A DNA stretch of 64,000 nt. Origin: Diadema antillarum. Lineage: Eukaryota. Positions within the stretch are counted from its first letter, which is position 1, and every line of letters begins with the position of its first letter. The DNA lies in contig NW_027270909.1 of NCBI RefSeq assembly GCF_040938485.1, positions 3,224,001-3,288,000 of the forward strand, given 5' to 3'. The position numbers and the translations under genes were made by a program. The notes beneath the pieces were generated by a model, which did no database searches, was not told the origin of the DNA, and saw only the letters and a program-made list of their open reading frames with translations. Of this stretch, positions 15,036 through 58,824 are shown in pieces.

Positions 15036-15219
15036 CTCGTCGGTGTGGGGTTTTCTCCATCATCTTAAGCCTGCACGCTAGGACATCCAGAATATCACTG
15101 AGCACTTCTTGCCTGGAAGATACCTCGACGTCAACTTACTAGAGAGGACTCGTAAACGTCTCAATTGGAAAAGCACGTTATACTGCAAGAAACAAGAGGA
15201 TTTAAACACCACGCTCAAA

Positions 15220-17694: not shown

Positions 17695-17765
17695 TACTCA
17701 ATGTTTGAGTACGGAAAAAAAGTCAAGTTTGACGGCATGCATTACAAGTATCCACTATGTGGCAT
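17695..17765 (+). promoter_or_regulatory. Conserved downstream palindrome module, copy 2
   Basis: ACTCAATGTTTGAGT, GTCAAGTTTGAC, CCACTATGTGG. Confidence 0.55.
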
Positions 17766-19803: not shown

Positions 19804-19842
<39 letters not shown>

Positions 19843-19845
<3 letters not shown>

Positions 19846-22800: not shown

Positions 22801-23998
22801 ACAGGGCACTTTCGGGACAAGTTATCCCTATCGAAGGGATTGCATACGTCACGGACGTTCGCTGGAATTGTCACGGACGTTCGTTCTACTGATAGGGTCA
22901 TGTTCCCGGACGGATAACTAATCGGCAGAGAGTACCTAGCCTTCCTAACTCTTTCAGAAATTTGAAAAGGTATTGTCAATGCAAATTATAAGAAATTTGA
23001 CATCCTTACAACATATGTATTGCTCAGAGGGGACCAGGAGGTGAATTTTCAGAGAAAATATTAATTATTTGTTAGGTTTTCGGTGAATTGCATGGTCCAA
23101 AAACTGCGGACAAGCCTCAGTCCGCTCCAAAAATAACATACAGCTCCTCGGCTAGAGAGCCAAAGGTAAAATGCACCTTCGTCATCAAAGCAAGATGGTG
23201 TCCCACTCGAAAACGTTTTAATCATCACGGACGTTCTTTTTTTTCTCGGAGGTTCGTCTAAAAATATAATTTCGGTTCCTATTTGACAAAGGATGGACAG
23301 AAACTCAAAACAAACATATTATCGTGTGGCTAGATCTTAGTTGATTACGACTCAGAACAATATCACCAATAGCGTTTAATGGGATACGATCTATATTAGA
23401 AAACAGCGGAAGCACGTCCGTGACGAAAACTGAGTATAATTTTGCATAAAAGAATATTACGTCCCATGTACAGCCAGCAGACGTACAATTTTTGCAGGAT
23501 ATGTTCATTAGGTGGAACACCAAATTTTCGTATACATTACAGTTGGGACAACAAAGTAGAATTTGCAGCAGCGATAGAAATAAAAGCACCACGGACGTTC
23601 GTCTGTTTAGGACTTTGATATTTCAATTGTTCTCTGTGATTTTATACGTGCTCATAAAGTTCTTATAATTTTGTGGTTCATACTCATGATGTGTCAGATC
23701 CAGAATATGGTCAGATATTAGATGCCACGTACCATTAAAAATGCACATCATTAGTTTGAAAAACAAAAATTATTGTGAAAATAGCGTTTTTACCGTATTT
23801 TTACGCTTTAAGTCCTTGTCAAATGAAAAATATCAGGCAAAAGTTAACCAAACCATATATTTCCTGAAAGGAAATTTACCAATCTTTGAGATGACATGAA
23901 AAAATCTGGTTTCTTAGATCATCCTGGCGTGTTCTAAGGGAAAGAATGTCATAAGGTGCGAAAATTGGCAATTGTACATCGTTCAAAATTCTCACCCA
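19843..23998. mobile_element. 4.2-kb TA-flanked composite element with 30-bp TIRs (TGGGT.AGAATTTTGAACGATGTACAATTG) and nested repeats
   Basis: 19843-19872 and 23969-23998 are inverted. Absent from unit 1. No convincing transposase ORF inside. Confidence 0.65.
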
Positions 23999-24002
23999 TA
24001 TA

Positions 24003-24251
24003 TGAAGAGTTTGTTCGCAAAAACCGATAAGCCCACTTTTGAAGATTTTGAGGTACGGTCTCTGTCATAAAGTACAAAATAGTACCTTTTAAATGATATA
24101 TTGGTCACTACATATAAAGGTACATTTCTGAAGTTATGGTCAAAAGAAGCAAACATTTTCTTATCATTCTCTTTATTTTTCTTGACCTTTCATAGCAAAT
24201 ATCTCCATTTGGCAAATATGGACTTATCGGTTTTTGCGAACAAACTCTTTA
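24003..24251. mobile_element. Same MITE family as 6956-7203, opposite orientation
   Basis: The interior is the reverse complement of the unit-1 copy. TA flanks. Confidence 0.75.
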
Positions 24252-25858: not shown

Positions 25859-28828
25859 CCCTTATGGAACAAATACAGTGTTACTACACTGTGATCACCT
25901 AGTTAACTATGTGTAAAATGTGTGAGTATAGTGTGTTCACAGTGTTGCTACAGTGTGAAATTACAAATTATGTGGTTCACCACGTACAACTCACACAGTC
26001 ATACACAGTTACCACAGCTTACCACATAATGGTCAAAGGTGCGTTATATGCTGCAGTATGTGGGCATGGTGTGTTCATAGAGTTGTCATGGTAGGAATTT
26101 TCAGACTATGTGGTTAACCACAAACTTATCATATGGTGACATGCAGTTACCACATAACAGTCACAGTGTGTCACATATTGCAGTCTATGGGAATAGTGCC
26201 TCCACAAAGATGTCACAGTGTGAAACGATGGACTATGTGGTTTATTTCTTTCACAAAGTAGTATACAATTACCATAGCTTCCACATAATAGACACAGTGT
26301 GTAACATATTTCAGTCTGTGGGAAAGATGTGTTCACGTCAGAGCACAGTGTGTATTTAAAACTATGTGACTTACCACATTCTAAATCTGATGGAAATCAC
26401 AATTACCACAGCTTACCATAAAATGACCACAGTGTGTCACATACTGTAATATGTGAAATGTGTGTGCGCACAGAGTTGCCACAGTGTGGAATTCTAGTCT
26501 ATGTGGTTCTTCACCGAAAGTCACATAGTAAATCACAGTTGCTGCATCGTTTGCCACACAAAAACCACATTGTGTCACATATTGCAGTATGTGGCAATAT
26601 TGTGTCCGCCGAATTGTCACAGTGTAAAATTCTAGATCATTTGGTTTCTCACCCAGAAGTCACACAGTGAATCGTCATGTACTACAGTTTACCACAAAAT
26701 AACCACTGAACATGTCACATATGTGACCGTGCACCTCAAAACGAACATAAAGTCGCACACACTGATTTTGCGTGAGGACTGAAAATATGTGAAATGGGTC
26801 AACCTAGCTGAACTTGAATTTTTCATATTTTCTGAAAGAGCGGGTCTTCTTTTACATTATGCTAAAATTTGGTATCATAAAACGGGCAGGAAAGTGCGTC
26901 TTTTAGCAGTTTATCTCGAACATTTTTGGTAGAATAGTGTGATTAGGTGTGTCTTTAGAATCCCTTTTTCATTTCTGAAAAACCTTGTCCACATTCTTCA
27001 CTTTCAACTCTAATAACTTTTGAAAGGATAGTGCTCCTGCTTTGAAAGTTGGCATTAATTATGAACAGAATGTGTTAATGAGGCGTGCTTAATTTCAGTT
27101 CAATCTGATAATCCCTTCATTGTTGTTACTCTGGTGGTTTACTTCCTGTTTTTTATCCCATTCATCGCACAGCCAGCACGGTTTGGTAAAGATTAAGCGC
27201 TTGAATAGACACTGTACTTCAGAGCCTCTTTTCTCAGTTCACACTTTTCTTGAGTTTGTGCTTTCTTTCCAATATTTAGATAGGTTAGGAGAGTCCATTT
27301 GATTTGAGTTATACATCATTTTAAAGCTCAAAGTCTGCTCTTTCAGAATATAGTCTTAACTAAAAATTCATGTCTGGCGACTTTTTTGTTTGTTTTGAGG
27401 TGCAGGGTCACATATGTTGCAGCATGTTGAAATGTAGTGTTGCAGAAATGTCACAGTATCGACCGACCCGCAAGTGAATGGCGATGGGGTATGTCATTAA
27501 AATTGTGATAATAATATTGCCAGGGAAAACATTCATTCACTATTTGAACGCGACACAGGATATTCTTGTGGTATTTTGGAACATATGTAACAGGACAATA
27601 CCACACAGGAGTATCACACAGGAGGACCACACAGCAAAACCACATAGTACTCCATATCGCACAACAGCACATAACAATACTTAATACCACACAGCAATAA
27701 CGCAATAAAGGCAAAACCGCACAGAATACAGAAGAAGGTACCACAGAAAAATACCACAGGGTATTATTCTGGTTTTTTTTCTTGATATACTATACCACAG
27801 GACTATCACAAGACAATACAATGTACCACACAGCAGTACCAACTGGAATAGAATAACAAACAAAAAAAAACCACACATATATTTCAGAATTTAATTGACC
27901 AATGAATAATGCTAATAACAATTGATTTAAACCGTAATTAATCTGGCCTATCCTCCTACAGTACTACCTATTAAGTGAGAGTGCTGAGGTACAGTATGTG
28001 ATACTTCATGTGGTATTTCTGTGGTATTCCTATGGTATTGCTGTGGTACTCCTGTGATAACCCTGTGGCACAAATTTTTACATAGCTAATGAATATCCAT
28101 TAAAAACAATCAAAATTTTAGAAAATACATAAAAGACCTCTAATTTCAGAGTAGGCCTATTAATGATGGAACTTACTTTGAACTTTATTAAAGATTGTCT
28201 AATAATGTTATAATATTCCCAATGTCATAAATTTTGTTATGAAAGTGTTATTTCATATCTTGATAGTAAAGTAATGTCTAGTAAGTAACCATGCCTTAAT
28301 GCATTACGAATAGATGGCATATATGTACGTACTGATACACCCGATGACTAACTAGGAATAGGATGACTATAACAGGGGATCTGTGATTTAGGTCTAGAAT
28401 GGTAGTAGGCCGTATGAGTTGTTTGAGGTTATAATAAGAAGAAGGACAGGCTTTAAAGGTAGGGACATGTTTGTCCTGAAATTCATCACTCGCCTTAATA
28501 GGTAAATTCTTGTAATTCTTTTATGGCTATTGATTGTCCCAGATTTTTTTTTTTCCGACTGTGGTTGATAAAACAGAGTGAAAGATTGTGGTAGATAACA
28601 CAGTGTGAGAGACTGTGGTAGATAACACAGTATGGGATGCTTCATTTTGACATACTGTGTTACCTACCACAGTATCCACCCTGTGTTTTCCACAGTGTGA
28701 TAATAACAAAGCATTACCACATGTCTCAATTTCACAGATAACCATTGTGTGACATAACACACTGTGTTTCACACTGTGAATCACAGTGTGTTTTACTATG
28801 TGGCAACACTATGACTATTCAATAAGGG
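25859..28828. mobile_element. CMC/EnSpm-like non-autonomous element (CCCTTAT...ATAAGGG termini, ATG 3-bp TSD)
   Basis: TIR CCCTTAT.GAA...AGTGTT.C.ACA. ATG at 25856-25858 and 28829-28831. Many CACAGTGTG/CACACTGTG repeats. Confidence 0.65.
26722..27412. mobile_element. TGTGACC-terminus MITE nested in the CMC-like element
   Basis: TIR TGTGACC.TGCA.C.CAAAAC.AAC..AAAGTCGC with TA TSD. Empty site in unit 1 at ~9571-9585. Confidence 0.85.
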
Positions 28829-32176: not shown

Positions 32177-33641
32177 TAATAATCATGCTTTCAATACGCT
32201 CTTAAAAGCGTGGGTTTGTAGTCGAAATCTTTGACTGACAGCTGGCGCTCTGCGAGTCATGAAGCCGTTCCCTGAAGTCTTTCAATGCTATCATAAACGC
32301 GATCATGGAATGAATAATACTCATTTTCCCCACATCGAAATACAGTAATTGATGCAGAATGTATCTCACAAGGAATAACTTTTTAAAATATAATTCAAAA
32401 CAACTTGCAGGCTTATTCTGGATTGATGAGGATTTCAGGCAATGAAGATTATTTCACAATTAGAGACTTGATACTGAAACATATCAATAGCATTCTTATA
32501 AGGTATCTGAACAAAATGTCCTTTGTTTATTCTTGTAGAGTGGATAAGGGAAATATAATCAAGAGAGGATTTTGTTCTTTACATTAGAAAAGACTTGCAC
32601 TTCATGTTCATACCGACTTTCTCTTAATCGTGGCATCTGAACACATGTGTCAGAAATTTAAAGAAAACACTCCGAGGTATTTACCTCATTTGACATCTAA
32701 TTCTTTTTATGTGAAATTGAACGATTGCACCCATAAGTTAATATGCATGATATTTTAGGAAAAGAAATGAAAAAAAAAAGCCGGCAAAGTAGACGTGTCG
32801 CTATCATAATATGTGACACTATACTCTCATTTCCATCTTGTGTTTAAAGCTTGCCGATAACACTTTGCCTTTATTTGCAGTGTTTTGTACGCAATTTGCA
32901 ACTCCTTTCCAGTCTCATATATATTATACATAATAATTTGTATAAAACGTGGCAAAGGTGGCGAAACCAGAAGGAGATGGAGGGGAACTCTACCTTGTAT
33001 GCCCTTTTCTAGGGTAGAGGTTATGTCGACATCTCATATTTGTAGTTTCTTCTTGGCTTTCATATTACCTTCTTTTCACCTTGAAAGTCAGACCTTTGTA
33101 TTCCCTTGTTTTCTTGATATATGAATATCAAGTTATCTATAAAATATCCACCTTTGTATGAATCAAATTGGCCTTGCTTAGGTTTATATGGCTTCGGGTT
33201 CTTTTTCCCTCTTCAGGAAGGAAACTATTCCCCCTGATAATTTTTCTGCTACGCTTAATATCCCTTTTACATCAGTATCTTTAGCTGTGTGTTTGAGTTG
33301 CTCTCATAAATGTTGTTTCAGAAACATAAACTCTGTCGAGTGACAGATCCTTTAGCGTCACAAACTGTTTAATCTATGTCAGCTCGCGTCAAGTTTCTCT
33401 CTATCTAAAACACTTCATCACAGTTCTGCGTCACCAAATAATGACTTCAGAAGTAGTCTTTAGTATTCTTGCAATAAGTATTTTTGTTTGATAGTACTTT
33501 GGTCAGTTCCAAGGTAAGGATTAGCTCATTAGAAAAATATCCAATATCCAATTTTAAGTGGAACAATGTAAAGTGTGTTTAGGAAGGCTATTTCTGGCTC
33601 TATAATTTCATGTACATAATCTAATTATAGCGGCACCTCCA

Positions 33642-33832
33642 GGGAATTCCCTTGCCCATGGACTAGTTTCATATTTGAACAGGGTGTACAGACGATAGAC
33701 CTTAGTTTAAACAGCACAAACAATAGGATCGGGATGCATATGATAGCGGGACGAAAGTGGGAAGTATTTGAAGACACGTTCCGTGTTCGTACAGGTGACA
33801 TAATCTCCATCCGTGAAGCTGATGGTATAAAA
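33642..33832 (+). promoter_or_regulatory. IL-17 copy 3 promoter: kB 33642-33651, TATA 33826
   Basis: Same motif order as the other copies. Confidence 0.75.
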
Positions 33833-34022
33833 CTGGTCAGTGTCGTATTGTCTTCATCATCATACGCCTGCATGCCAGGATATCCAGTGAATATCACTTA
33901 GCATTTCTTGCCTGCAAAACTACCTCGACGTCAACCTACTGGAGAGGACCCTTAAACGTCTCAGTTGGAAAGGCACGCTATACCGTATGAAACAACTAGA
34001 GGACGTCAACAGCAAACTCAAA

Positions 34023-35088
34023 ATGAACGTGAGTCCTAGCACAACTGTAGTTTGAAATGCACAGAGAATCGTGCCATTATATTTTACCGTCGCTCCTGAT
34101 ATGCATTAAGAGTTGGTATCGTTGCAATTACAATTCCACATGGTACTTCAGTTAACTCCCTGCGCTCATCTTTCATCTATCAAACACGAGAAAGACGTGT
34201 TGCGATCAGCCGTATGTACTATAATACATTCACTTTATTCTGTATGTGTCAGTTCATTCACGTTAAATTTTATTTTCTTTTGCAAAAGCCGCGTCTCATT
34301 AGTCCATGGAAATTAATAGAAGGTCAATATTCATCATAACTACGTCTTCCATTTGAATAATATGTCACTGCATTACAACTCCGTTGCTTGTTGAAATGTA
34401 AATAGTATTTCAGTTGGTGTTCACTTAACTGCATATTCTGAAAAAGAAAAATCAGTTTGACTTAATTTCATGCATATGGACGTAATGATGTATCATTTAC
34501 CAATATCTTTATTCTTTGCTTCATCAGACCCTCCTCCTGCTTACGTCGATGACAGTAGCCATCTTCCAGACCGTTACATCTTCGCCAGTCCCGAGCACCT
34601 CTCAGGCATGTCTGCCAATAGACGCAGCTGATTCCCATCGACGAGAACTGAACTCTAATCTTTTCTATCCTAAAGCGCCAGCATTCGCAGTACAAAGTTT
34701 CAACCTGTCGACCAGTGACATGGGCTTGGCCGGTACGTCAAGCTGTCCGTTTGATGGCGTCTCCAGCCCGCAGGACTGCCCCGTAGGAGCGAAACCAAAT
34801 GCTGGAAGTCCGGAAATCACGAACCAAGACGGCTCGTGTCCATGGACCTACGTGGAGTGTTTCGATGCTGACCGTATCCCAATGGCGATCACTATGGCTC
34901 AGTGCCAGTGTTCGGCATGTCTGGACCCTTACACAAACGAGGTGGATCCCAACCTTCGATGTCAACCTGTAATGTACAACATGAAAGTCCTACAGAAGAC
35001 CCAGTGTGTGGATGGCCACTTCCGGTACGAGCAGAAGACCCTTCAAGTCCCCGTGTCATGTGCCTGTATGCGCAGGAGACGTGTCTAG
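34023..35088 (+). CDS. IL17: IL-17-like cytokine, copy 3 (coding exons 34023-34028 and 34528-35088; ~188 aa)
   Basis: Same IL-17 motifs. ATG AAC|GTGAGT donor, CATCAG|ACC acceptor. Confidence 0.92.
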
Positions 35089-39248: not shown

Positions 39249-41187
39249 CATCATATTAAAACAAATAACACAAGACTCACCTTTGTTCGCACACATTGTA
39301 AATGTCAGGAATTGTTTTATACTTTGAATTCAATAGCTTAGTGGTTCTACTAAAGCAACTTTTACCTTTATGAATCCCTTCTTGTTTCCGATACTGCAGT
39401 AGATACACATTAACAAAATTAATGTATATAGATATGAGAACATCAGTGCTTCCCACAATTACAGAGTAAATGTTTAACAAATAATATGGATATTTAAATC
39501 AGTGCGATGATGATCGCATCAAACTGCGAGACTATAAGCGATTCAACGTTTTAACTTAATTGTTGGAAAACAAACTTTACCATTTTATCATTTTTAGATT
39601 TTGAACTCTTTTTCTTGACTCGTCAATATGAAAATCAGTCAGAAGCACTTACTTTCCAAGTTGCACCATTTCACCTGATTATTGCATTCCACGTCAAGGT
39701 ATCCTCACACAGACCATGCAGACAATGTCAAAATATGTTGATTTCAGCGGCATTTGCATTGTTTTGTCTTGTTTATGAGAAAAATAGCCTGAATGAAATC
39801 GGTATGCACACATACAGTTTGTAAAGTAGAATTACAGCTCAACTGGATTGCTAGCACGTTTTCTTTTTCCACAATCAAGTCAGTAAAGCTACAACGGAAT
39901 AGGATTCACAGTGCGCCATAATTCTCGACACTGTTTAAATAATGTGACTAGACTGTGTTCTGAATAATGCATTCTTTCGGTGAGGACTGTCTGTAAACCA
40001 GCAGCGTTCATCCTCCCTTAGGATCGGCGATCCATGAAAATATGGTACAAGAATACTGACACCTCCTCCCCCCCCCAAAAAAAAAACAACAACAAACAAA
40101 CAAACAAACAAACAACAACAACACCAGCAACCCACATGATAAGGTGAAACAAAACTTTGAGAAATACATGCATAATGTCTTCTATATTATATTCATATAA
40201 ATGATAACTGACTTTCATTGTGCTACAGTATATAATATGCATGACTAACGCATATTAAACAATATAAAGGCTTGCATATTATCTGAACGTAAACGGTATA
40301 CCCATTATCTTCATTTCTATGAATAAAACGTCAGTTGACTCCAATCATCTTGTGTAATTGGACACGAATTATGTCGCATACAGTGCAAATGAATTTACAG
40401 GATGGTATATTGATGATAGAATGAGGGTCGCTTTCTTGAACTTTTGGAACTTTTTTTTTTTTACTTTTATAGACTAAGATGATATTCCTCAGCACACGCA
40501 GGGAAGCAGAAAAGATCTTGCATGTGCTGTCCACGAAACATCAGCTACTGTATGTAGGCTGTTGGACTGATCTCTTTCCTCCAGTCATCTAAGAGACATT
40601 GCATTAGATTAGAAGACTACTGCAGTTTGTGATGTCACAAACAAAGAAAGAGATAGCAGAGGAAATTATATAATCCTTATTATGTCAGCGACAAAGAAAT
40701 TCCTGAAGAAACTGAAATTCTTTTCATATCGTTTTTACATCTTATGTGCCATCATAAAATGTAGAAGTCTCCTCAACCATCGATGGCAGCTGTGAAACTT
40801 GAAAATTCAGAACTATTGAAATAATATTCCTGCATTCATTCAATTCACCTTGTACAATCCACACATTTATTTGAGAGAACTCGTCCTGAAACAAAGTTAC
40901 TGTTCATACATGTTTTTGTTTGTTTTGTTTTGTTTTTGACACTGGATTCAGAGAAAGACTCAACTGTTGTGGCTGTAATTGCAAATATTTTGCTGCCTCT
41001 TCAATATGAATGATATCGTTCAGTACGGAATGCCCCTCCCACTCCAAAGTTGCACTAGCTTCTATGACTCAATCAAAAGGGGATTATATGTATATATATA
41101 TATATATATATATGTATTGAAACAAGAGAGGGAAAACTGACCAGAAACAAACAATAATAAATAGTGAGAACTTTGAGCAAAGAAAAT

Positions 41188-41264: not shown

Positions 41265-41399
41265 TAGATCAGTATTCGTTCCAAACCCTTAACTCTCTTT
41301 GCTCGTGTGGTCACAAGCTATAGTGTGTGTATGTGTGCCACACACACACACATTAACCTTTGTTAATGTTTTACTCTTTTTTTTGTCCGTTGCTCTCGA

Positions 41400-44300
41400 T
41401 TACATCGTGTGTTTCCATGGATATGTAGGGAGCGAAACAACTTCGTATGGGCCTTCTTGAAAGAGTTTATCATGTCCAATCTGAAAGCCCTCGACATGTA
41501 GCCTTGAGACTGACCTTAGAAGGTTGAACACATCATCTGAGAGTATATTGGTATCAGACGGTCTTTGCAAGGATCCTGTCACTACTACGTCATTAGTGCA
41601 AACCGTTGATGTTGTAGCCACTTCCTGAATGACGGGAGATAAAACTGGATGAGGACCGATTTGCAGGAAGAAATTGAATCCATCTTGCAGAAGTTTCTGA
41701 ATGGCAGTCATAAATTTTACCGGCTGTCGAACGTTCATCCACCAATACATAGCACTGTTGACTTCTCTAAAATCGGAGTAATTGCTTGTGACCGTTGAAA
41801 CAAGGGGAACATTCGGTGTCATGTTGGTAGTGTGTTTCTCCTCAGAGAATTTTAGAAACTCTAATTTCGACAACAAAGACTCACGTATCTCTTCCTGTTG
41901 GAAGCTGTGGAAACCGTTGTTGACGTTGAGCATCTTACACTTTATTCCCTGTTCTCGAAGATTCGCTGTGAATTCATCTAGTGCCTTATAACCTCCTGCC
42001 AAGACTATTTCTGTCGGGCTGTTAACTGCTGCAATATCGATTTCACTATCGTATCGACTGTTCTTCAGGCGTGTTTCGATATCTTCAACGTCATGCAATA
42101 TGGCTACCATCGTACCAATGCCATATGTCTTATTCAGCTCACGCCCTCTAATGTATATGAGACGAACAGCATCATCAAGAGTCAAGTGCCCGGCGGCATG
42201 AGCTGCGGCCACCTCGCCGACGCTCTGCCCCACGATTGCATCTGGGCAGATTCCCCGAGAGCGGTAGTATTCAGTCAACCCAACTTGGACAGCAAAGAGG
42301 GAGGGTTGTGCAACATCTGAAAACGTTTTAAAGGTAAGTAGAAGCAGCAGATTAGTTATTCGGTGTGCCTAAGACTACTGATTGTTATCCACGCGTCATC
42401 TCTTGTTAGTTTGCTTGTTTTGTATACCCGCAAGAAACAAGAAACATTATCTAATTATACTTTTATTTAATATTAGCGAATTAGTTTTACTGCACACGCA
42501 CAGCACTCACTCACATCTTCCTTTTCACTCTAACGCGTGATATTGCAATATCAAACAAATAAAACTACTTTCGGTGAGGGGCAAACCTGAGTAACAATGA
42601 CGCCATAAGCCCAGTCAAGCCATATGCTTATGATGATGGTCTCATGCTTCCTTAATGAATCCTATGTACTGCTTTTTTTCTGTATTATTACGCAATTATA
42701 GATGTTTTACAAAACATTAGTTGTGTACGTAGTATAAACTGCACTTTTGTCATATTCTCCTTCGCCATTTGGTTGTTTTTTCAATCGTCACACTCATGAA
42801 ATTAGTTTTGATTTGATTTGATTTTGAGCAGATACGAACTGAATTATTATAAGAAAGCTGAATCAGCCTTAAAATAAATCAAAGTGATACAATTTGAAAA
42901 GAACATTTGTTTATTTGACCTGATTATATCAAATTGAGGAACAATAACATCGCTTTTGAGACTTATTACCACTGACCTGTTTGGTTTATTTTCTCTTGGT
43001 CATCTTCATCCGTCAAGAGGTGTACCAGTGACCACGTTGCTCCACATCTTGTAAGTATTTTGTCAATGTTCTATCATCGGAAAAAAAGCAAAAGCAAAAA
43101 CAACAACAGCAAAAATGTATATTTATATAAACTGGAAAACTCTTACACTTTTCCGAAAAAGGAGGAACAGTGAAAGGAAAGCTACGCACTGTTTTTCCTT
43201 CTTTTCTCATTATATCACTTATAAATATATACATATTATGTATATAATATGGCTTATCGAAGACAAACTGGTAATCTTTCTGGCAAGATAACATAATTCA
43301 AGGCGTATTCGAATTCGTCAGTGGAATCAATATAGTAGAGATAAGAGAAATAGAACAGAAAGAAGGAAAGGACAGAAAGAATAAATTCGATGATTTGAGA
43401 ATACCTGTATGACACTGCGGAATTTCGGTTCTTCTGCCATGAGACGACGAGCCATTCCCCGCCACTGGGAGCCCATCCCGGGGTAGACGAAGACCAAGCG
43501 ACGAACTGGAATGCTCGTATCCCCAGCCTGGCCCTCTATGACAGTAGTAGCGGCTTTGACATCTTGTTGGAGTTTAAGTCTGATCTGGTTCCTTGCATCA
43601 CTTGGGGATCTTATGATGATACCCACGCGATGGTCGAGATGGCTGGACCGTACACCTGCAGTGTACAATGCGTTTTTATACAAAATCTCGTCATCTCTTA
43701 TTACTTCTGCCATAAAGGCTTCCCACTTCTGGAGGTATTGAGCGAGTGCGTCCCTGCTTGCTGCCGATAGGAACAAAACTGACGGTTTCTCTGTGACTTT
43801 CCCATTAAAAAGTTGTGTTTGTCTGTTTCTAGGTTCAAAACCTTCCAGAACTATGTGAGCATTGGCACCATCGAAACCAAATGAACTGCAACCAATCAAC
43901 TGCTTGGCCCCACTTGGCCATTTAGTAATTTCCGTTGAAACACACAGGTTCAAGGGTGAAAGGTCGACGTTCTCATTTCCTTTACTGAACTGTACTTGCT
44001 TTGAAATCTTTTTGTTTTGCAAGCTTAGTGCAGCCTTGATTACACCAGCTACGCCAGCTGCTGCATCGGCATGGCCAAAATTTGTCTTTAAGGATCCAAG
44101 GAACAGCGGAGTTTGATCTGACCGACGTATGAATCCCAAAGCTTCACCTATAGCATTGGCGCCTGATGCGTCCCCGGCACTAGTACCGGTACCGTGCAGG
44201 TCGAGGAACGCTACGTCTTCAGGGTTGACTTTGGCATCACCGCACGCCTTTTTGAGGAGGGCAATCTGTGCTTCATAACTAGACTGACCGATTCCAGACG

Positions 44301-45875
44301 TTCGACCGTCGTTAGAGAACGTTCCTCCCCGAATGACCGCGTAAACCCTGTCTCCATCCTCAATGGCCCGTTTCAATGGCCTGAGAACGACAGCCCCTAC
44401 ACCTTCCCCACGACAGCGGGCCGAGTCATCAAATGTTTTGCCTTTCCCTTCTTGGGCGTCATCGTCGCCCTGAGAGAAAATGCTTGTCCCACCTGCTACA
44501 GCCATGTCACACTCGCCTTTCCTCAGTGCTTTCCATGCAAGGAGAATTGCATCCAGAGATGACGAGCACGCTTTGTTCACCGTCAAGCTAAGTCCACGAA
44601 AGTTGTACTCATACGATATTCTATTTGATACCATATGTGACCCTGCATCACAAAACAAACAGAAAGTCGCCAGGCATAAAACTTTAGCTAAGAGCATATT
44701 CTGAAAGAGCAGACTTTAATCTTTAAAATGATGTATAACTCAAACCAAATGGACTCTCCTACCCTATCTAGATATTGGAAAGCAGGCACACACTCAGGAA
44801 AAGGGTGAACTGAGAAAAGATGCTCTGAAGTACAGTGTCTATTCAAGGGCTTAATCTTTACCAAAGCCGTGCTGCCTGTGCGATGAATGGTTAGTTATAG
44901 GAGTTGAAAGTGAAGAGTGTGTACAAGGTTTCTCAGAAATGAAAAGGAGACTGTAAAGAAACATTAAATCACACTTTTCTGCAAAAAAAAAAAAACAATG
45001 TTCGAGATAAACTGCTAAAAAACACTTTCCTGCCCGTTTTATGATCCCAAATTTTAGCATAATGTAGAAGAAAACTTGCTGTTTCAGAAAAGATGAAAAA
45101 GTCAAGATCGGCTCGGTTGACCCATTTCACCTATTTTCAGTGCTCACACAAAATCAGTGTGCGACTTTTGGTTCGTTTTGTGATGCACGGTCACATAATG
45201 TGAATTACCACTATTTTTGGTGTACAGAATGACAACGTCCGTAGGAACTCCAATAAGGAGGCTGAACTCACTCGCAGCCATGCCCATATACACTCCGATG
45301 GTCGATCCACGTACCGACTGGGCTGGTATTTCTGCGTCTTGAAGGGATTCCCAAACCACTTCGAGAAGGATCCGAACCTGTGGATCCATTTTGTTTGCCT
45401 CTTCTGGAAATGGAGAAAAAAAAAACAGAACATGAAATATGTAACGTAAGCTGCAATTGGACACCCAGGCTCTAAAGTTAATTTGCATTGCATTAGTAAA
45501 GTAAAGAAATCCTTTTAGTTTGTCGCAGAGACTGGCCGAAATACGTCCTAACGGAGAAAAACATATCCCCCTGCACCTCTAAAAGAATAAGATACCTGGA
45601 GATATTTTGAAGAATTCTCTGTCCAAGTATTCTTGATCCTTTTTGAGGTATCCAGCACACTTGTACTTCTTCCAGGGACACTTCTCACCAGGGGAAACGT
45701 AGGACACCTCGTCAGAGGGTTCGGGAGGGATAGATGTTGTGCAGTCCATGCCCTTGTCAAGCACATCCCAGAACCTGTAGACACTGTTAATGCTGTCGGC
45801 GAATCGACATCCGATGCCAACGATGGCGACCTTGCCATCGACCGACATCGTTGGGTCGGTTAAGGAGTCCGTCAT
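41400..45875 (-). CDS. Type I PKS/FAS-like KS-AT gene, truncated after the AT (predicted exons 45875-45596, 45403-45209, 44642-43405, 43070-42977, 42316-41400; 907 aa); functional didomain or decaying pseudogene
   Basis: KS motifs VAIVGIGCRF, MDPQVRILLEV, ACSSS, HGTGT, KTNFGH, SSFGF. AT motifs VFVYPGMGSQW, QPSLFAVQ, GQSVGE, GFHS, IGPHPVL. Post-AT linker LPTYPW followed by TAA. All four proposed introns are GT-AG with matching phases. Confidence 0.8.
44636..45195. mobile_element. TGTGACC-terminus MITE inserted in the PKS KS coding sequence
   Basis: Same TIRs and interior as 26722-27412 and 58139-58824. TA flanks. Confidence 0.85.
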
Positions 45876-48889: not shown

Positions 48890-49275
48890 ACTGTCTGGTA
48901 TGTTTTGGATGACTGGAGCATAAACAGGTGATAAAAGGCCTGTCTAGTATGTTTTGGGACGACTAGAGCATAAATAAGTGATGAATGGCCTGTCTGGTAT
49001 GTTTTGGGATAACTGGAGCATGAATAGGGGATAAAAGGCCTGTCTGGTATGTTTTGGATGACTGGAGCATGAATAGGGGATAAAAGGCCTGTCTGGTATG
49101 TTTTGGTATGACTGGAGCATAGGTAGGTCATAAGATGACTGCCTGGTATGTTTTGGGATGGCTGGAGCATAAATAAGTGACAAAAGGCCTGTCTGGTATG
49201 TTTTGGGACGACTGGAGCATAAATAGGCGACAAAAGGCTGGTCCGGTATATTTTAGGATAACTGGACCATACTGG
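48890..49275. repeat. ~50-bp minisatellite, ~7.5 copies
   Basis: Unit approximately GGCCTGTCTGGTATGTTTTGGGATGACTGGAGCATAAATAGGTGATAAAA. Confidence 0.9.
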
Positions 49276-50644: not shown

Positions 50645-52185
50645 ATTAATGTCCTACCGCCTCTTTGCAATTCGTGTAGAACTATATCAATTTGTATGCG
50701 TTTGTGCTGTACAGCATTACCTAATTATTTCTTTGCGACGGTAATTCCGCATTGCAATAGATTTGACTGACTTTGCGCACTTATTAGCCAGCGAAAACCA
50801 AGAAAACTGTGTGTGGCAATTATAGCTCTTCTTCTACTCAGCTCCTTAAGTTAATCATGTGTTTACCATGTTATTCCATGTTGATATGATTTTGCAAAAG
50901 CCTTGTATGATAAAAAAGAAGAAATGCGTTTATCATAATTACATATACTTCAATTGAATAATGCAACATTTAACTCTTTTATTCTGTGAATGTCGATAGT
51001 TTTTCAGTTGATTGCTGCTTACTATAATTATATTCTCCCTAAAAAGCAATGGAGTATATGAATACAAGAACGACCCAAGTCCATGGAAGACCATTTCGAG
51101 TAAACTAAAAAAAAAAAACTTCATATCTTTTTATTTGTCCAATAATATTCTATTTACCTGTGATGGGAAGGCAACATTGTATATACAAATTACAACATAT
51201 ATTATTGTGACAATTAACATTTTCATTAATTGTGGAGAGGCCATTTTGTGTGGTGGACTTGGGTCGTTCTTTGATTCATATACATGATATTCTGCTATAG
51301 AGATGAGAGAAGGATGAGAGAGGGCGCTATTATATGAATGTAAGAATGACCCAAGTCAATCATTCTTACATTAATATAAGATTTAACTCATTCATTTCAG
51401 GCACTTCCGGGGGTAATTAGGATTTATCATTTATACACAAGATGAGTCCATGCATAAGCTACAATTTCCCATGTCAAACTGAATTTGGCCAAAAATTGGA
51501 CTTGGGTCGTTCTTATATTCAGGTCTTCAATTGGTGGGGGGATTCCTTTTTTTTTCATTCTTCGTCGTGCGAGTATACACTTATCAATTATTAATCTCCT
51601 TAAATTGTTGTTTTGTCTCATCAGATCCTGTTTCTACTTACATCGTTGATTGCAGCCATCTTCCAAACCATCTTATCTTCACCAGTCCCGAGCACCTCTC
51701 AGACATGTCTGCCAATAGATGCAGCTGACTCCCATCGACGAAAGATGAACGCCAACCTTTTCTATCCTAAAGCGGCGGCATTCGCCGTACAAAGCTTTAA
51801 CCTCTCAACCAGTGACATGGGCTTTACCGATACGTCAAGCTGTTCATTTGATGGTGTCTCCAGCCCTCAAGACTGCCCCGTAGGAGCGAAACCAAACCCT
51901 GGAAGTCCGGAGATCACAAACCAAGACGGCTCGTGTCCATGGACCTATGTGGAATGCTTCAATGCCGACCGTATTCCAATGGCGATCACTATGGCCCAGT
52001 GCCAGTGTTCAGCATGTCTGGACCCTTACACACACGAAGTGGATCCAAACCTTCGATGTCAACCTGTGATGTACAACATGAAAGTCCTACAGAAGACCCA
52101 ATGTGTGGATGGTCACTTCCGGTACGAGCAGAGGACCCTTCAAGTCCCCGTGTCATGTGCCTGCATGCGCATGAGACGAGTCTAG
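50645..52185 (+). CDS. IL17: IL-17-like cytokine, copy 4; main exon 51625-52185 intact but exon-1 start reads ATT and the donor is degraded (possible incipient pseudogene)
   Basis: Open IL-17 exon. The homologous exon-1 position reads CAAA ATT AAT GTCCTA instead of CAAA ATG AAY GTGAGTCCTA. Confidence 0.8.
51057..51521. mobile_element. Two adjacent copies of a small MITE (51057-51280 and 51333-51521) in the IL-17 copy 4 intron
   Basis: TIR GAAT..AAGAACGACCCAAGTCCA and TGGACTTGGGTCGTTCTT..ATTC, each occurring twice. Confidence 0.7.
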
Positions 52186-53428: not shown

Positions 53429-56400
53429 CAAGTTTCAAGTTTCAAGTTTCTTTATTTCACCAAGCAAAGAAGATATAAAAACAAACAAACACATACAACA
53501 ACATTAGAATACAATTACAAAATATCAGTTAAACAGTGTAAAAGGAATTGCTGTGGTAGGCAGCAGCCAGAAAGGAAATGTCCCTTATTTTCGGCTGACC
53601 TAAAAACATACGTTAAATTTCTGTTACCAATGTGTTCGAAGCAAGTAAAACATAAGAACAAGACAAGACTAAGACATAGCAATCAACACACAAAGACAAT
53701 AACAAACACCTGATGTCTCAAAACGTAAAGGGTAAAAACTGATACTCTAACTTAAATGAATTTGGTTGTCATTATTGAAGAGAATTTTTTTTATAACCAG
53801 ACTTAAATATATTCAATGAGTTAGCATTGCGTATTTCAAAGGGGAGAGAATTCCACAGAATAGGACCACTGTAAAGAATAGATCGTTGATAAAAAGATGT
53901 ACGAGATAGAGGTAGGTGAAAATCACTCGCGGTTCGCGTATTGTAATTATGAATTTGATTATTGTATGTGAAAAAGTCCAAAAGAGTTTTTGGTAATATA
54001 AAGTTCTTACATAAATACATAAAAATCCCCACTTGGTATTTATACATATCATTCAATTGCAATATTTTCAGGGATAAAAAGAGTGGTGGGGTATGGGCAA
54101 GATAAGAGGCATGGGCAATGATTCGCATTGCACGTTTTTGAAGTAGTAATAGTCTTTGAATATGACATTCATGAGCATTACCCCAAACAATTATTCCATA
54201 ATACAAATAAGGTAAAATTATAGCACTATAAATTGATTTCAAAACAGAATTTGGGAGAAAACTAAGTTTGTACATTACACCAATATTTTTTGATAATTTA
54301 TTACAAATATAATTAATATGATTTGACCAATTCAACTTATTGTCTACAAAAACTCCAAGAAATTTCAGTGAGGAAACTTGCATGATTTGAGAACCACACA
54401 TATTAATAGATACAGTATCAATGTTAATTTTTTTTCTTTGTAAATATCATAAAATTAGTTTTTGATATATTGATTAATAATTTGTTCATTCGCAGCCAAC
54501 TTGTAACATATTGCAATTCCTTATTAAAAACCTCTTGTAAAGAATCCATATTATCATGAGACAAAAATATACTTGTGTCATCGGCAAATAAAATGCATTG
54601 TAAAATATTAGAAACATTCGGCAAATCATTTATATATAAAAGAAATAAAATAGGCCCAAGGATCGATCCCTGGGGCACTCCACATCTTATGTTTTTATAT
54701 TCAGAAACATTCTTATCAATTGATACAAACTGCTTACGGTTACTCAAATAACTTTTAAAAAGATTTAAAATAACTCCACGAATACCATACTGATCTAATT
54801 TAGCTAAAAGAATATTATGATCAAGCGTGTCAAATGCTTTGCTCAGGTCTAAAAATAAGCCCAGTAAAATTTTCCCGTTGTCTATTGCACAGATCACCTT
54901 ATGAATGAAATCAATCAATGCAGAAGATGTGGAGTGCCCCGGTCTAAATCCATACTGATTTTTCTTAATAATATTGCACTTTGTCAGAAATTGAATAAGC
55001 CTAGTGGAAATACATTTTTCAAAAACTTTGGAGAAAACGGATAAAACTGATATTGGGCGATAATTTGTCATTAAATCAGGGGAACCACTTTTAAAAACTG
55101 GTACTACTCTTGCGATCTTCATTTTATCTGGAAAAGTACCAGATTCCATGCACTGATTGAATATTGCACATAAAGGTTTACATATCAAATGAACAGCTCT
55201 TTTCACAATTCGCATATCAATATTATCGTATCCAGCACTGACATCATTCTTAAAAGTGGTTACAACATCAATTATCTCTTTACAAGTAATTGGTTTAAAA
55301 AATGCAGTTGGCTCAACTTTTGTAACATATTGAAGATAATCATACTCATCTGAAACATCAAAAGATGAATTAATATCGCAACCAATATTAACAAAATATG
55401 TATTTAACAAATTACAAATCTCTTTCTCATTTATAATTGTTTCATTGTTACACTTAATAGATTTAATGGTTGTTCTCTTATTGCACTTTTTCCCTAAGGC
55501 ATTATTTATCACATCCCATGTCTTTTTACTATTCCCATTACTATCAGCTAACTTTTTCTCATAATATTTCTTTTTAGCTAATTTTATCATATTAGTCACT
55601 TTATTTCGATATTTCTTATAAAGAGTTTTACGGTAATCATTTGGATTCTTTTTATACAATTTATACATTTTACATTTTTTCCTTATTAATTTACGAATAT
55701 AATTTGTACACCATACATTATCATTTTTCCTTCGTTTTCCACAAACTGAAATCAACGGAAATGATTCATTATATTTGTCAGTAATTAAATCAAACAAATT
55801 ATCAAAACTAATATTACCATCATTTTTATCATATTCCCATGACGTCGATTCCAGTGACCGTAAAATATATACAATATTATTTTCATTTGTATCTCTCCTC
55901 ATTTGTCTTTGTTGACTTTAAACAATGAAATTACACTTTTACAAATACAATATACCGGGAAATGATCTGATATATCAGTTAAAATAATTCCAGAGTGGAT
56001 CTTACAAGAATCATTCGTAAAAATGTTGTCAAGTAATGAAGCGGAAGAGTCAGTGACACGTGTGGGATAATGAACCAAAGGTAACATAGAATTCAATAAT
56101 AGCAAATCCAAAAATTCATTTACATATTGCACACACCCTATTTTAAGCAAATCAATATTAAAATCGCCCATTAGATAAAAACATTTCTTTTCCTTTTTAA
56201 CAATATCTAAAATATCATTCAAAGACTCACAAAATTCATTAACTGACTTGTTGGGTGGTCTATACACAACACATATCAAAGTAGAAGTATTGCAATTTGT
56301 TATTTCTATAAATATACTCTCAAAAAAATCAGTGTTAATATCAAGATCGCATCGGCGATTAAAAGAGATATCTTTATGTACATTAAACCCAACACCTCCT

Positions 56401-57240
56401 CCGCGTTTAGTTTTGCGACTGTTACCAACGAACTCATAATTGTTAATATTGCACAGTGATAAAGGTGAATTATCATTTAGCCATGTTTCACTAATACCAA
56501 CAACTTTGATTTGCATAGACAAGGAAGAGAGAAAAAGCGATAAAGCATCAAAATTGCGACATAAACTTCTCACATTAATATGAATACAAGACAAATATTT
56601 ACTCAAATCTTCATTGAAATATTCATTTTCGACAAAATCATTGAACTCCTCCGGTGTAAAATTTGTTTAAAGTATATCATTGTTAATTACAGATTCAGGT
56701 GGTGATAAAAATTCATTCAGAGTATTGAAATCAATATCATTGAGACATCCGAGAAATCTATGCTTACACGACATTACATGCACACTATTGCACACAAAAC
56801 ACATATATGACACTGGAACATAATGACTATGAATTTACAAAATGCAGGTACCAAAATTTATATAAAACGAAGTAAGCCTGTAAATCAATACAAAATAATA
56901 AACATAAACGGAGAGCTGGATTGAGATACAATCATATACTTTACAGCTGTACTTGTTTGCTGGTCACAAATTCACAGATGCAGGTCGTTTGACACGTGTT
57001 TAATGACAATCATTTTGTGTTTAATTTCTTCAGGTCTTCTTCACATGTAATCAGTTTTGTGATGTTCTTTCCCCCAGATGCACCAAGAAGGGCAATTACA
57101 CGGCCATCAGATGACCACGCTGATATCACCTTGTGGGTATTGCGGGTGAACGAAACAGGACCATACCAGTGACCATCCAACATCCAACAGTAACATTTCC
57201 ATCTTTCAATGTCCCATAACTTTTTAAGGTAATAAGCAAC
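53429..57240 (-). mobile_element. L2/Crack-like LINE, 5'-truncated: ORF1 C-terminal remnant, APE-RT ORF2 broken by frameshifts, (AAACTTG)n tail
   Basis: APE motifs INVRSL, GISETWL, YRPPN, MGDFNIDLL, SDHFPV. RT motifs YRPISVL, QYGFR, LDLSKAFD, GVPQGSILGP, LFADDT. ORF1 end AWSSDGRV...CEEDLKKL at ~57010-57145. AATAAA plus three 7-bp tail repeats at 53429-53449. Confidence 0.9.
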
Positions 57241-58138
57241 GTATACATTATGTGTCTAATATAAAGACACTACCACAAATATGTACATGTACAATGATAA
57301 TGCAGGAAGCAATGCAATTTTATGAAATAAAAATAATTATGGATCATCTTTGTTGCGTTCATTTGCTTTACATCGATAAAGAAAATATGGTGTAGAACTC
57401 CAACCTACCTCTGATTCTTTGCCCTGCGCTCATGTCACAACGTTTCGAAATTTGATGGAAATATTTCTTAAACGGGTCACACTCATCGTTCCCCCTTTTT
57501 AACGGATGAGACATCCATACTTTATTTAGGATAGGGAATTTTTGTGGAATCTTATCTTTAGATAATTATCGATCTTTGCACGCCTTTGTAAGTCATCTTA
57601 ATTTCCCTTTAGCAACAGATTGTTCAAAACAATGAACAAAATGTAGTTTTCGAATTCGTAAGTTGCTTTTACGAAATATATTCACTCGTAAACATTACTT
57701 CATTCACAAGTCACTCGTTATCATTCGCTCTTACTGTTTACTGTTTATTGCCTCAGATAACACAGAGAAAATGTGTATTTGAAAAATGACTTGCCTCTAA
57801 TTGAACTTTTCTCACATTAAACACAAACATGTTTAGAAAAACACAACTGAAATAAGCACGCAGGTATGGTATACATCATGTGTGTATATACATATATATG
57901 CTTATATATGTGTTCATATATATGCATACATGAGTACGCCTATATGTATATCCATGTGAGGTGACACCAATTAGACTGAGCCACTTGGGAAACACAAGCA
58001 CACGTCAGCCCAACCAGAATCATTAATGTCGATAGCAAGTCTATGAAGAAGTGCATCAGTCGTACTATGTATCCCATATACTATTGGTGTTCTGAAAAAC
58101 ATTTCCCACTTTTAACCCTTAATAGTTTGAAAACCATA

Positions 58139-58824
58139 TGTGACCGTACATCACAAAACGAACAAAAAGTCGCACCCCTTGATTTTGTGTGAGGACTCAA
58201 AAAAGGTGAAATTGGTCAATCGAGTCAATCTTTAGTTTTTCATATCTTCTGAAAGAGCTAGCCTTCTTCTACATTATTCTTTAATTTGGAATCATAACAT
58301 GAATGGGAATGTGTGTTTTCAGCAGTTCTTCCACAACCCCTTTTTTAGGGGCGAGTAGAATGATCAGGTATGGAAGCCCCTTTCCATTTCTTGAATTCCT
58401 TTGCAAACGCTTCATTTCATTTTCAAGACTTTTGAAAGGATAATGCTACCGCTTTGAAAGTTGGCATTGATCATGTACAAAATGTGTTCATAGAAAATGC
58501 TCAATATCAACTTAATCTGATAACCCCTTCATTGTTGATGCTCCGGTGGTGTACATCCTGTGTTTTGTCTCTTTCATCGCACAGCTATTAGCACGGCTTG
58601 GTAAAGATTAAGCACTTGAATAGACCCTGTACTTCAGAGCTTCTTTTCTCAGTTCACACTTCCAGAGTGAGTGCTTTCTTTCCATTATTTAGGTAGGTTA
58701 AGGAAGTCCATTTGGATTGAGTTATACATCATTTTAAAGCTGGGAGTCTGCTCTTTGACAATCTGCCCTGAACTAAATATACATGTCTGGCGACTTTTGG
58801 TTGGTTTTGTGATGCAGGGTCACA
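58139..58824. mobile_element. TGTGACC-terminus MITE, third copy
   Basis: Same TIRs and interior as the other two copies. Confidence 0.85.

What the first reader, a model, noticed from the sequence alone, without database searches (positions are those of the whole stretch)
41400..45875. A polyketide synthase KS-AT didomain gene embedded inside an IL-17 cytokine array
Seen: five minus-strand exons with GT-AG introns join into one 907-aa frame. It keeps the KS Cys-His-His triad (ACSSS, HGTGT, NFGH) and the AT serine (GQSVG, GFHS). It stops four codons after the post-AT linker LPTYPW, and no DH/KR/ACP exons were recognisable downstream. Known: animal type I PKSs are normally single multidomain iterative enzymes, and sea-urchin pigment (immune) cells use a PKS for echinochrome. 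Inference: this is either a stand-alone KS-AT acting in trans, physically linked to an inducible cytokine locus, or a decaying duplicate. A cytokine-PKS cluster is not an arrangement I recognise.
Basis: partly seen in the sequence, partly recalled or inferred. Interest (0 to 1): 0.8.

Follow-up and report, generated by a model that had tools for sequence, protein, structure and literature searches.

The report
Truncated sea-urchin Pks2 paralogue (KS-AT only)
The KS-AT gene is real, but it is the front end of an old extra copy of the sea-urchin skeleton-cell gene Pks2 that lost its other domains by an internal deletion; it now looks weakly constrained or dying, and nothing ties it functionally to the IL-17 genes around it.

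Summary
Five minus-strand exons (45875-41400) join into a 907-codon KS-AT frame, and no DH/KR/ACP exons lie in the window. RefSeq already annotates the locus in Diadema antillarum as XP "NorA-like", 908 aa.

New points:
1. The gene belongs to a Diadema-specific expansion of Pks2, the skeletogenic-cell PKS, not the pigment-cell Pks1. Its closest full-length paralogue is 65% identical.
2. In that paralogue, exons 2 and 3 are one exon, so "intron 2" is a MITE inserted into coding sequence.
3. AT-to-TE is one 5.6-kb exon in the paralogue. Here homology ends 9 codons after the TAA. A dead remnant of the thioesterase C-terminus, with 4 stops in 65 codons, lies 0.8 kb downstream, so an internal deletion occurred.
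4. The KS-AT frame stayed open far longer than neutrality allows (omega about 0.19 against the paralogue).
5. Decay signs: 60 of 354 family-invariant residues are replaced, and an 11-residue KS deletion is unique to it. Allelic replacements ignore conservation (dN/dS 0.63). The other haplotype has a frameshift, and no D. setosum counterpart is annotated.

Verdict: a truncated Pks2 paralogue that was long kept as a didomain and is now probably decaying. The IL-17 linkage looks positional. No RNA data were available.

The parts
45596..45875 (-). Exon 1: ATG and the start of the KS N-terminal domain (aa 1-93)
   Evidence: It corresponds to exon 2 of the full-length paralogue P0279.
45209..45403 (-). 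Exon 2: KS N-terminal domain, continued. The other haplotype has a 1-nt deletion at window position 45240.
44632..45203 (-). MITE copy inserted into the KS-coding exon. The acceptor AG lies 11 nt inside the MITE's end, and the donor GT lies 7 nt upstream of the MITE.
   Evidence: Other copies lie at 26715-27416 and 58135-58825. The paralogue L007 and the sea-cucumber L006 have one uninterrupted exon here. The RefSeq model P0151 joins the exons as an exact excision.
43405..44642 (-). Exon 3: KS catalytic core (Cys184 codon 44566-44568, His308, His349), the KS-AT linker and the start of AT. The unique 9+2-residue deletion follows AGG at about 44480.
42977..43070 (-). Exon 4: a 31-codon mini-exon of AT, conserved as a separate exon in the paralogues
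41400..42316 (-). Exon 5: AT core (Ser634 codon 42222-42224, Arg659, His739), the post-AT linker LPTYPW, and TAA at 41400-41402. It is identical between the two haplotypes.
41373..41399 (-). Last recognisable homology to the paralogues' giant final exon, 9 codons past the stop. This is the left edge of the internal deletion.
40470..40664 (-). Dead remnant of the thioesterase C-terminal region (matches aa ~2400-2530 of the paralogues). It is on the same strand and in the same frame as exon 5, with 4 in-frame stops in 65 codons and one gap.
   Evidence: tblastn gave E 4e-5 to 0.01 with six paralogues. Profile tiles gave iE 1.6e-6 and 8e-5. A by-eye extension reaches the natural C-terminus.
34516..35088 (+). 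Flanking IL-17 gene on the opposite strand
   Evidence: ORF. The annotated neighbour carries PF06083 IL17.
51613..52185 (+). Flanking IL-17 gene on the opposite strand

Best explanation
Origin (shown): this is the KS-AT front end of a Diadema-specific paralogue of sea-urchin Pks2. Pks2 proteins are about 2500 aa with the domain order KS-AT-DH-KR-ACP-TE. An internal deletion inside the ancestral 5.6-kb last exon removed DH, KR, ACP and most of TE. The old C-terminal tail survives 0.8 kb downstream as non-coding debris.

Long-term history (inferred): after that loss the KS-AT frame was kept open by selection for a long time, so it served as an ACP-less truncated protein. The most plausible role is a partner or loader for the full-length Pks2 paralogues. 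Canonical KS constraints were loosened during this period.

Present state (inferred): the locus looks weakly constrained or freshly dead.
- A MITE sits in the KS exon on both haplotypes.
- Allelic amino-acid changes ignore conservation.
- One haplotype carries a frameshift.
- No counterpart is annotated in D. setosum.

Its position between IL-17 genes is positional, not a biosynthetic or regulatory cluster.
For: Identity and origin:
- The window's product equals RefSeq P0151, on D. antillarum contig JBFRCO010000021.1 between two IL17-domain genes.
- The closest full-length protein is P0279 (65% identity over all 907 aa). Next come P0281, P0282 and P0280 (59-61%) and S. purpuratus 'polyketide synthase 2' (57%).
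- The ML tree puts the fragment in a Diadema-only clade (SH-aLRT 100) that is sister to SpPks2.
- Three intron positions are shared with P0279 and with a sea-cucumber Pks2.

Truncation:
- In P0279, aa 674-2553 are one exon.
- Here homology stops at 41373, and a thioesterase-tail remnant with 4 stops in 65 codons lies at 40664-40470.
- Nothing from DH, KR or ACP is left.

Long maintenance of the frame:
- There are 0 stops in 907 codons against 4 in 65 in the tail.
- Against P0279, dS is 1.14, dN is 0.22 and omega is 0.19.

Loosened constraint:
- The end branch is 0.44, against 0.14 for P0279.
- 60 of 354 columns invariant in nine full-length proteins are changed here, against 3-18 in the others.
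- A 9+2-residue deletion after AGG is unique to the fragment. E306D, E319G and G416D are also unique.
- 16 of 79 family-wide conserved KS positions are changed, which is as many as or more than in 96% of 815 KS domains compared.

Present state:
- The two haplotypes (the assembly keeps both) differ by 35 replacements and about 17 silent changes in exons 1-4, giving dN/dS 0.63.
- 15 of the 35 replacements fall on invariant columns, where 42% would be expected if mutation were blind to conservation.
- The other haplotype has a 1-nt deletion in exon 2.
- Haplotype pairs of full-length P0279 and P0281 differ at 0 and 9 of 985 residues.
- The full-length paralogues have D. setosum orthologues at 95-97% identity, but the fragment has none among proteins of 167-1204 aa.
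Against: - The window haplotype has no stop or frameshift in 907 codons.
- Exons 1-4 carry 1 indel against 18 in the introns (Fisher p 0.002). The contrast is weaker once homopolymer and microsatellite indels are set aside.
- Roughly 6 or more disabling lesions would be expected across both haplotypes if the exons had been neutral since the haplotypes split. One is seen. This is my own rough estimate.
- Exon 5 shows no difference at all between the haplotypes.
- The MITE can be removed in frame, either through a GT-AG pair that uses the MITE's own strong acceptor or as RefSeq joins it.
- The exon-2 deletion in the other haplotype could be a read error at about 11x coverage.
- No RNA data were available in either direction.
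Confidence: 0.6

Rival explanations
1. The gene is functional today as a stand-alone KS-AT enzyme. The MITE is spliced out as an intron. The protein lacks an ACP and works in trans. It could be a malonyl-loading acyltransferase, or a heterodimer partner or modulator of the full-length Diadema Pks2 paralogues. The KS half would then serve mostly as a scaffold.
For: - The frame stayed open long after the 3' tail died.
- The catalytic Cys-His-His, AT Ser-His-Arg and GMGSQW motifs are kept.
- GQS in place of GHS also occurs in the full-length Asterias rubens orthologue.
- The exons are poor in indels and substitutions relative to the introns.
- Exon 5 is identical between haplotypes.
- The MITE carries a polypyrimidine tract plus CAG acceptor, and an in-frame GT-AG pair exists.
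- RefSeq models the locus as coding.
Against: - Allelic replacements hit family-invariant columns at the blind rate, and both alleles carry such derived changes.
- The other haplotype has a frameshift.
- An 11-residue KS deletion and 17% of invariant residues are changed, and AT is affected as well at 13.5%.
- No D. setosum counterpart is annotated.
- No RNA evidence is available.
Confidence: 0.3
2. The gene is part of an immune gene cluster. In this reading a PKS module is co-regulated with inducible IL-17 genes, for example to make a defence metabolite in immune cells.
For: The only support is physical position. The gene lies between IL-17 copies at 34.5 kb and 51.6 kb on both haplotypes.
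Against: - It is on the opposite strand.
- It is not included in the duplicated IL-17 unit.
- It derives from Pks2, a marker of a subset of skeletogenic cells, not from pigment-cell Pks1.
- It lacks an ACP and all processing domains.
- It shows signs of decay.
Confidence: 0.04
3. The gene is the 5' part of a longer, intact PKS whose later exons are reached by splicing before the TAA.
For: A GTAAT overlaps the stop codon, so a donor site is formally possible.
Against: - In the paralogues, AT-to-TE is one exon, so no donor is expected at this point.
- Homology runs straight through the stop for 9 codons.
- The only downstream PKS-like DNA in 41 kb is the thioesterase tail, which is riddled with stops.
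Confidence: 0.02
4. The sequence is a bacterial contaminant or a recent horizontal transfer. RefSeq names it after a Streptomyces PKS, and the best solved-structure matches are bacterial.
For: The RefSeq name is 'NorA-like', and the top PDB matches are bacterial PKSs.
Against: - It nests inside an echinoderm Pks2 clade.
- It shares intron positions with echinoderm paralogues.
- It sits in multi-megabase urchin contigs on both haplotypes.
Confidence: 0.01

Closest known systems
Sea-urchin polyketide synthase 2 (S. purpuratus Pks2, P0273, 2606 aa) and its echinoderm orthologues
   Same: The KS-AT region is 57% identical and falls in the same clade. The GMGSQW-type AT motif is shared, and so are three intron positions.
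   Different: Pks2 proteins carry KS-AT-DH-KR-ACP-TE, and the fragment stops after the post-AT linker. The fragment also has an 11-residue KS deletion and 60 changes at clade-invariant positions.
Full-length D. antillarum Pks2 paralogue P0279 (XP_071491503.1, 2553 aa; locus L007)
   Same: It is the nearest relative, at 65% identity over all 907 residues. The exon layout is the same apart from the MITE and an extra 5' exon.
   Different: - P0279 is conserved. Its two haplotype copies are identical over the first 985 aa, and its D. setosum orthologue is 97% identical.
- P0279's end branch is 0.14, against 0.44 for the fragment.
Excised KS-AT didomains of modular PKSs (for example DEBS modules 3 and 5, CurL; PDB 2qo3, 2hg4, 4mz0)
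   Same: The architecture is the same: KS, linker domain, AT and post-AT linker ending at LPTYPW. These are among the best solved-structure matches. From my own knowledge, such fragments are catalytically competent with a separate ACP.
   Different: Those are laboratory truncations of bacterial modules. This one is a natural truncation in an animal genome, and its KS is degenerate.
Unitary or polymorphic pseudogenes derived from duplicated genes
   Same: Shared features: a large internal deletion, a transposon in an exon, a frameshift on one haplotype, replacements blind to conservation, and no annotated orthologue in the sister species.
   Different: The 907-codon frame is still open on this haplotype, and it was clearly maintained long after the truncation.

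Membership tests
Type I PKS ketosynthase domain | Pfam ketoacyl-synt and Ketoacyl-synt_C scores above the curated cut-offs | tested here: met
   44, 45 and 77.5 bits on the N-terminal domain and 97.3 bits on the C-terminal domain, against cut-offs of 20.8.
Type I PKS ketosynthase domain | Catalytic Cys-His-His triad | tested here: met
   Cys184, His308 and His349 align with the triad of all the paralogues.
Type I PKS ketosynthase domain | Intact conserved core: the loop after AGG, EAHGTGT, GDxxE and GFGG | tested here: not met
   - A 9+2-residue deletion follows AGG.
- E306D, A307L, E319G and G416D are all unique to the fragment among 18 relatives.
- 16 of 79 conserved KS positions are changed.
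PKS/FAS acyltransferase domain | Pfam Acyl_transf_1, plus the Ser-His dyad and the carboxylate-binding Arg | tested here: met
   - Pfam gave 153.6 bits.
- Ser634, His739 and Arg659 are present.
- GQS replaces GHS, as it does in the full-length A. rubens orthologue.
- 15 of 111 clade-invariant AT positions are changed.
Echinoderm Pks2 clade | Phylogenetic placement with SpPks2 and shared gene structure | tested here: met
   The tree gives SH-aLRT 96-100. Intron positions are shared with P0279 and with a sea-cucumber Pks2.
Echinoderm Pks2 clade | Full domain set KS-AT-DH-KR-ACP-TE in a protein of about 2500 aa | tested here: not met
   Only KS-AT is coding. The thioesterase tail is dead, and no DH, KR or ACP is present.
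Self-sufficient iterative type I PKS | A carrier (ACP) domain in the same protein | tested here: not met
   No PP-binding-like sequence was found in the frame or in the window.
Pseudogene | Disabling lesions in the reading frame | tested here: inconclusive
   - The window haplotype has no stop or frameshift in KS-AT, provided the MITE is spliced.
- The other haplotype has a 1-nt deletion in exon 2.
- The 3' tail has 4 stops.
Pseudogene | Neutral evolution (dN/dS near 1) | tested here: inconclusive
   - Between haplotypes, dN/dS is 0.63 and not significantly below 1 (p about 0.07), and replacements are blind to conservation.
- Over the long term, omega against P0279 is 0.19.
Functional cytokine-PKS gene cluster | Co-expression or conserved synteny of the PKS with IL-17 genes | not testable with these tools
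   No RNA run was listed, and no other echinoid genome could be read. The PKS piece lies outside the repeated IL-17 unit.

The most novel reading that the evidence does not exclude
An animal has kept, under selection, an ACP-less KS-AT didomain cut out of a full PKS. The protein would work in trans with the full-length Pks2 paralogues, as a malonyl loader or heterodimer partner. A MITE inserted in its coding exon would be removed as a new intron using the MITE's own acceptor site.
Probability: 0.3. Interest if true: 0.6.

Novelty: new member of a known kind. Interest (0 to 1): 0.35.

Why it matters
The locus is not evidence for a cytokine-PKS immune cluster, and it should not be counted as an independent animal PKS type.

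It is still a well-resolved example of how a multidomain synthase gene is dismantled. The steps seen here are an internal deletion, a dead tail left behind, long survival of the front half as an open frame, then a transposon hit and a segregating frameshift.

If the didomain turns out to be expressed and active, it would be a natural animal counterpart of the laboratory KS-AT fragments. It would also be a case of a transposon-born intron.

The analysis further shows that Pks2 expanded to at least three or four full-length paralogues in Diadema. All the D. setosum members looked up lie on one scaffold.

Tried and rejected
- RNA evidence: the look-up of sequencing runs listed no RNA run for the gene, so read laying could not be used. 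Expression and the real exon 2/3 junction remain unknown.
- Representative search: the top 150 were swamped by multi-module bacterial PKSs, and only one close hit was useful.
- Solved structures and the length-limited homologue search at first suggested bacterial or amphioxus affinity. This reflected what those searches could see. A 1972-aa sea-cucumber ORF used as the query revealed the echinoderm Pks2 family.
- Ancestral donor at the stop: I considered that GTAATC overlapping the stop was an ancestral splice donor. I rejected this because the paralogues have no intron there.
- MITE target-site duplication: it could not be settled. All copies are bounded by CATATG-like ends, which may be part of the terminal repeat or a 6-bp target.
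- Indel deficit: the exon-versus-intron contrast (p 0.002) is weakened because about two thirds of the intron indels lie in homopolymers or microsatellites.
- Shift in constraint: comparing long-term changes with polymorphic replacements at invariant columns gave only p 0.06.
- Poly(A) signal: a scan for AATAAA was uninformative.
- Structure prediction was not run. It would not separate the hypotheses.
Full report
**1. Observation**

On the minus strand, five segments join into one frame: 45875-45596, 45403-45209, 44642-43405, 43070-42977 and 42316-41400. Each is flanked by GT..AG. Together they give 2724 nt, which is 907 codons plus TAA.

Pfam finds the KS N- and C-terminal domains, the KS C-terminal extension and the acyltransferase domain, all far above their cut-offs. 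The frame ends four codons after LPTYPW.

**2. Source and annotation**

The joined protein equals RefSeq model P0151 but for one codion-level difference: P0151 is 908 aa and named 'spectinabilin polyketide synthase system protein NorA-like', from Diadema antillarum. It lies on contig JBFRCO010000021.1, between two genes with the IL17 Pfam domain.

A second model, P0069 (688 aa), sits on contig JBFRCO010000002.1 (locus L001). That locus is colinear with window 57-35 kb at 92-98.6% identity. The assembly is known to retain both haplotypes: 1.75 Gb assembled against about 703 Mb haploid, with 84% of BUSCO genes duplicated (PMC13511894). I therefore treat L001 as the other haplotype.

**3. Family**

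Searches limited by query length first showed only amphioxus and bacterial relatives. One Logan contig (L006) carried a KS ORF, a mini-exon, and a 1972-aa ORF spanning AT-DH-KR-ACP-TE. Using that long ORF as the query brought up the echinoderm family. It includes S. purpuratus 'polyketide synthase 2' (P0273) and several full-length Diadema proteins.

Identity of the fragment to these proteins:

| Protein | Species | Identity |
|---|---|---|
| P0279 (2553 aa) | D. antillarum | 65% |
| P0281, P0282, P0280 | Diadema | 59-61% |
| SpPks2 (P0273) | S. purpuratus | 57% |

A maximum-likelihood tree of the KS-AT region puts the fragment in a Diadema-only clade (support 100) that is sister to SpPks2 (support 96). 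One orthologue from each other echinoderm class lies outside that clade.

Pks2 is a gene of a subset of skeletogenic mesenchyme cells. The echinochrome pigment enzyme is Pks1 (my own knowledge).

**4. Gene structure and truncation**

The locus of P0279 (L007) has five exons, covering aa 1-62, 63-158, 157-648, 648-679 and 674-2553. Three consequences follow.

- The fragment's exons 2 and 3 are one exon in P0279, and also in the sea cucumber. 'Intron 2' is therefore an insertion.
- That insertion is a MITE. Other copies lie at 26715-27416 and 58135-58825, and L001 has more copies. All have inverted ends bounded by CATATG.
- AT-to-TE is one 5.6-kb exon in P0279, so the fragment's end is not an exon boundary.

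RefSeq instead joins the exons as an exact excision, with AT-AC ends and one extra Asn. Both joins are in frame.

Homology to the paralogues runs 9 codons past the TAA, to 41373. About 0.8 kb further on, at 40664-40470, lies a remnant of the thioesterase C-terminal region. It is on the same strand and in the same frame. tblastn gave E 4e-5 to 0.01 with six paralogues, and profile tiles gave iE 1.6e-6 and 8e-5. The remnant has four stops in 65 codons and one gap. By eye it continues to the natural C-terminus with one more stop.

No DH, KR or ACP remnant was found anywhere in the window. The locus was therefore once a complete Pks2 paralogue. An internal deletion of about 4.3 kb of coding sequence left KS-AT plus a severed tail.

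**5. Long-term constraint**

Against P0279, dS is 1.14, dN is 0.22 and omega is 0.19, so the duplication is old.

The tail's stop density implies a neutral divergence of roughly 0.1 or more per site since it became non-coding. This is my estimate, taking about 0.126 stops per codon per unit of divergence. Over the same time a neutral 907-codon frame should hold a dozen or more stops, and it holds none. The contrast of 4 in 65 against 0 in 907 is highly significant.

I infer that the truncated KS-AT frame was maintained by selection for a long time after the loss of the other domains.

That constraint was nevertheless loosened:

- The fragment's end branch is 0.44, against 0.14 for P0279.
- It differs at 60 of 354 columns that are invariant in nine full-length proteins spanning four echinoderm classes. 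The others differ at 3-18.
- By domain, 20.6% of invariant KS columns and 13.5% of invariant AT columns are changed.
- Changes unique to it include a 9+2-residue deletion right after AGG, plus E306D, A307L, E319G, G416D and E821Q.
- Against 815 KS domains from diverse PKSs, it has as many as or more changes at conserved positions than 96% of them.
- GQS in place of GHS in the AT is not a defect. The full-length A. rubens orthologue has it too.

**6. Present state**

Between the two haplotypes, exons 1-4 differ by 52 substitutions, about 35.5 replacement and 16.5 silent. That gives dN/dS 0.63, with dS 0.041 close to the intron divergence. This is not significantly below 1 (p about 0.07).

Of the 35 replacements, 15 fall on clade-invariant columns, where 42% would be expected if mutation were blind to conservation. 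Both alleles carry such derived changes: 6 in the window allele and 8 in the other.

The other haplotype has a 1-nt deletion in exon 2 that shifts the frame upstream of the catalytic Cys. Its RefSeq model avoids this by skipping the Cys region.

As controls, the haplotype pairs of full-length P0279 and P0281 differ at 0 and 9 of the first 985 residues. Their D. setosum orthologues are 96-97% identical. No D. setosum or other echinoderm protein of 167-1204 aa resembles the fragment.

These points suggest that constraint is now weak or gone.

Four points argue the other way:

- The window allele is still fully open.
- The exons have 1 indel against 18 in the introns (p 0.002), though many intron indels lie in simple repeats.
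- The exons are less diverged than the introns (2.9% against 4.1%, p 0.04).
- Exon 5 is identical between the haplotypes over 946 nt, and differences resume 7 nt and 24 nt outside the exon. Protein-level selection alone cannot explain the lack of silent differences. Allelic gene conversion is my best guess, and I list this as unexplained.

**7. The IL-17 context**

Five IL-17-like ORFs lie on the plus strand, at 1.6, 15.7, 34.5, 51.6 and 61.9 kb. The repeated unit covers the IL-17 gene and its upstream 1.5-2 kb, and it does not include the PKS piece.

The PKS relic is on the opposite strand and derives from a skeletogenic-cell gene family. I found nothing that links it functionally to the cytokines. 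No RNA run was listed, so co-expression could not be tested.

**8. Verdict**

The thing is a truncated, long-surviving paralogue of Pks2 that is probably decaying now. It is already annotated as a protein in RefSeq but has not been recognised as a Pks2 remnant.

The reading of a live, trans-acting KS-AT didomain with a MITE-born intron is not excluded. I put it at about 0.3, and it is the only version that would be of wider interest.

My analysis confirms that the MITE sits in a former exon.

Noticed in passing
window 41377-42322: A 946-nt tract covering exon 5 almost exactly has no difference between the two haplotypes. The neighbouring intron 4 differs by 4.9% and the 3' flank by 2-3%. There are no silent differences either, so protein-level selection alone does not explain it. 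Allelic gene conversion is one possibility.
   Followed up: partly
window 26715-27416, 58135-58825, 44632-45203; L001 1421-2109 and 2129-2826: A MITE family of about 570-700 bp has inverted ends (TGACCGTGCA...TGCAGGGTCA) bounded by CATATG. One end carries a polypyrimidine tract plus CAG that can act as a 3' splice site. The KS copy lacks an internal segment of about 130 bp. Two copies in L001 lie head to head.
   Followed up: partly
L001 14750-18932 (inserted at about window 41100-41117): The other haplotype carries a 4.2-kb insertion between the AT end and the thioesterase remnant. It is 94% identical to window 19822-24003, so it is a mobile element that is polymorphic between the haplotypes.
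   Followed up: no
L001 10001-14274 (protein P0069) compared with window 41400-45875 (protein P0151): RefSeq models the two haplotypes differently. The L001 model skips the catalytic Cys region by using cryptic sites inside exons 2 and 3. It also uses a donor inside exon 5 (ATAC|GTGAGT) that ends the protein early, even though exon 5 is identical in both haplotypes.
   Followed up: partly
proteins P0279-P0283 and P0403-P0408; locus L007: Pks2 is expanded in Diadema to at least three or four full-length paralogues, each with a D. setosum counterpart. All the D. setosum members looked up lie on one 39.8-Mb scaffold. The pair P0280/P0406 differs at 4.6% of residues, which is far more than the other haplotype pairs.
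   Followed up: partly
window 48891-49271; L001 6137-6970: A minisatellite with a unit of about 50 bp has clearly more copies on the other haplotype.
   Followed up: no
window 53772-56606 (minus strand): Three consecutive ORFs of 235, 492 and 209 aa look like a non-LTR retrotransposon (endonuclease, then reverse transcriptase). This is judged from the translations only.
   Followed up: no
window 196-3975, 14167-17954, 32954-35078: Three of the five IL-17 copies share a longer repeated unit (82-86% identity over 2-3.8 kb, including the upstream region). The copies at 51.6 and 61.9 kb share only the coding part (about 88-90%).
   Followed up: no
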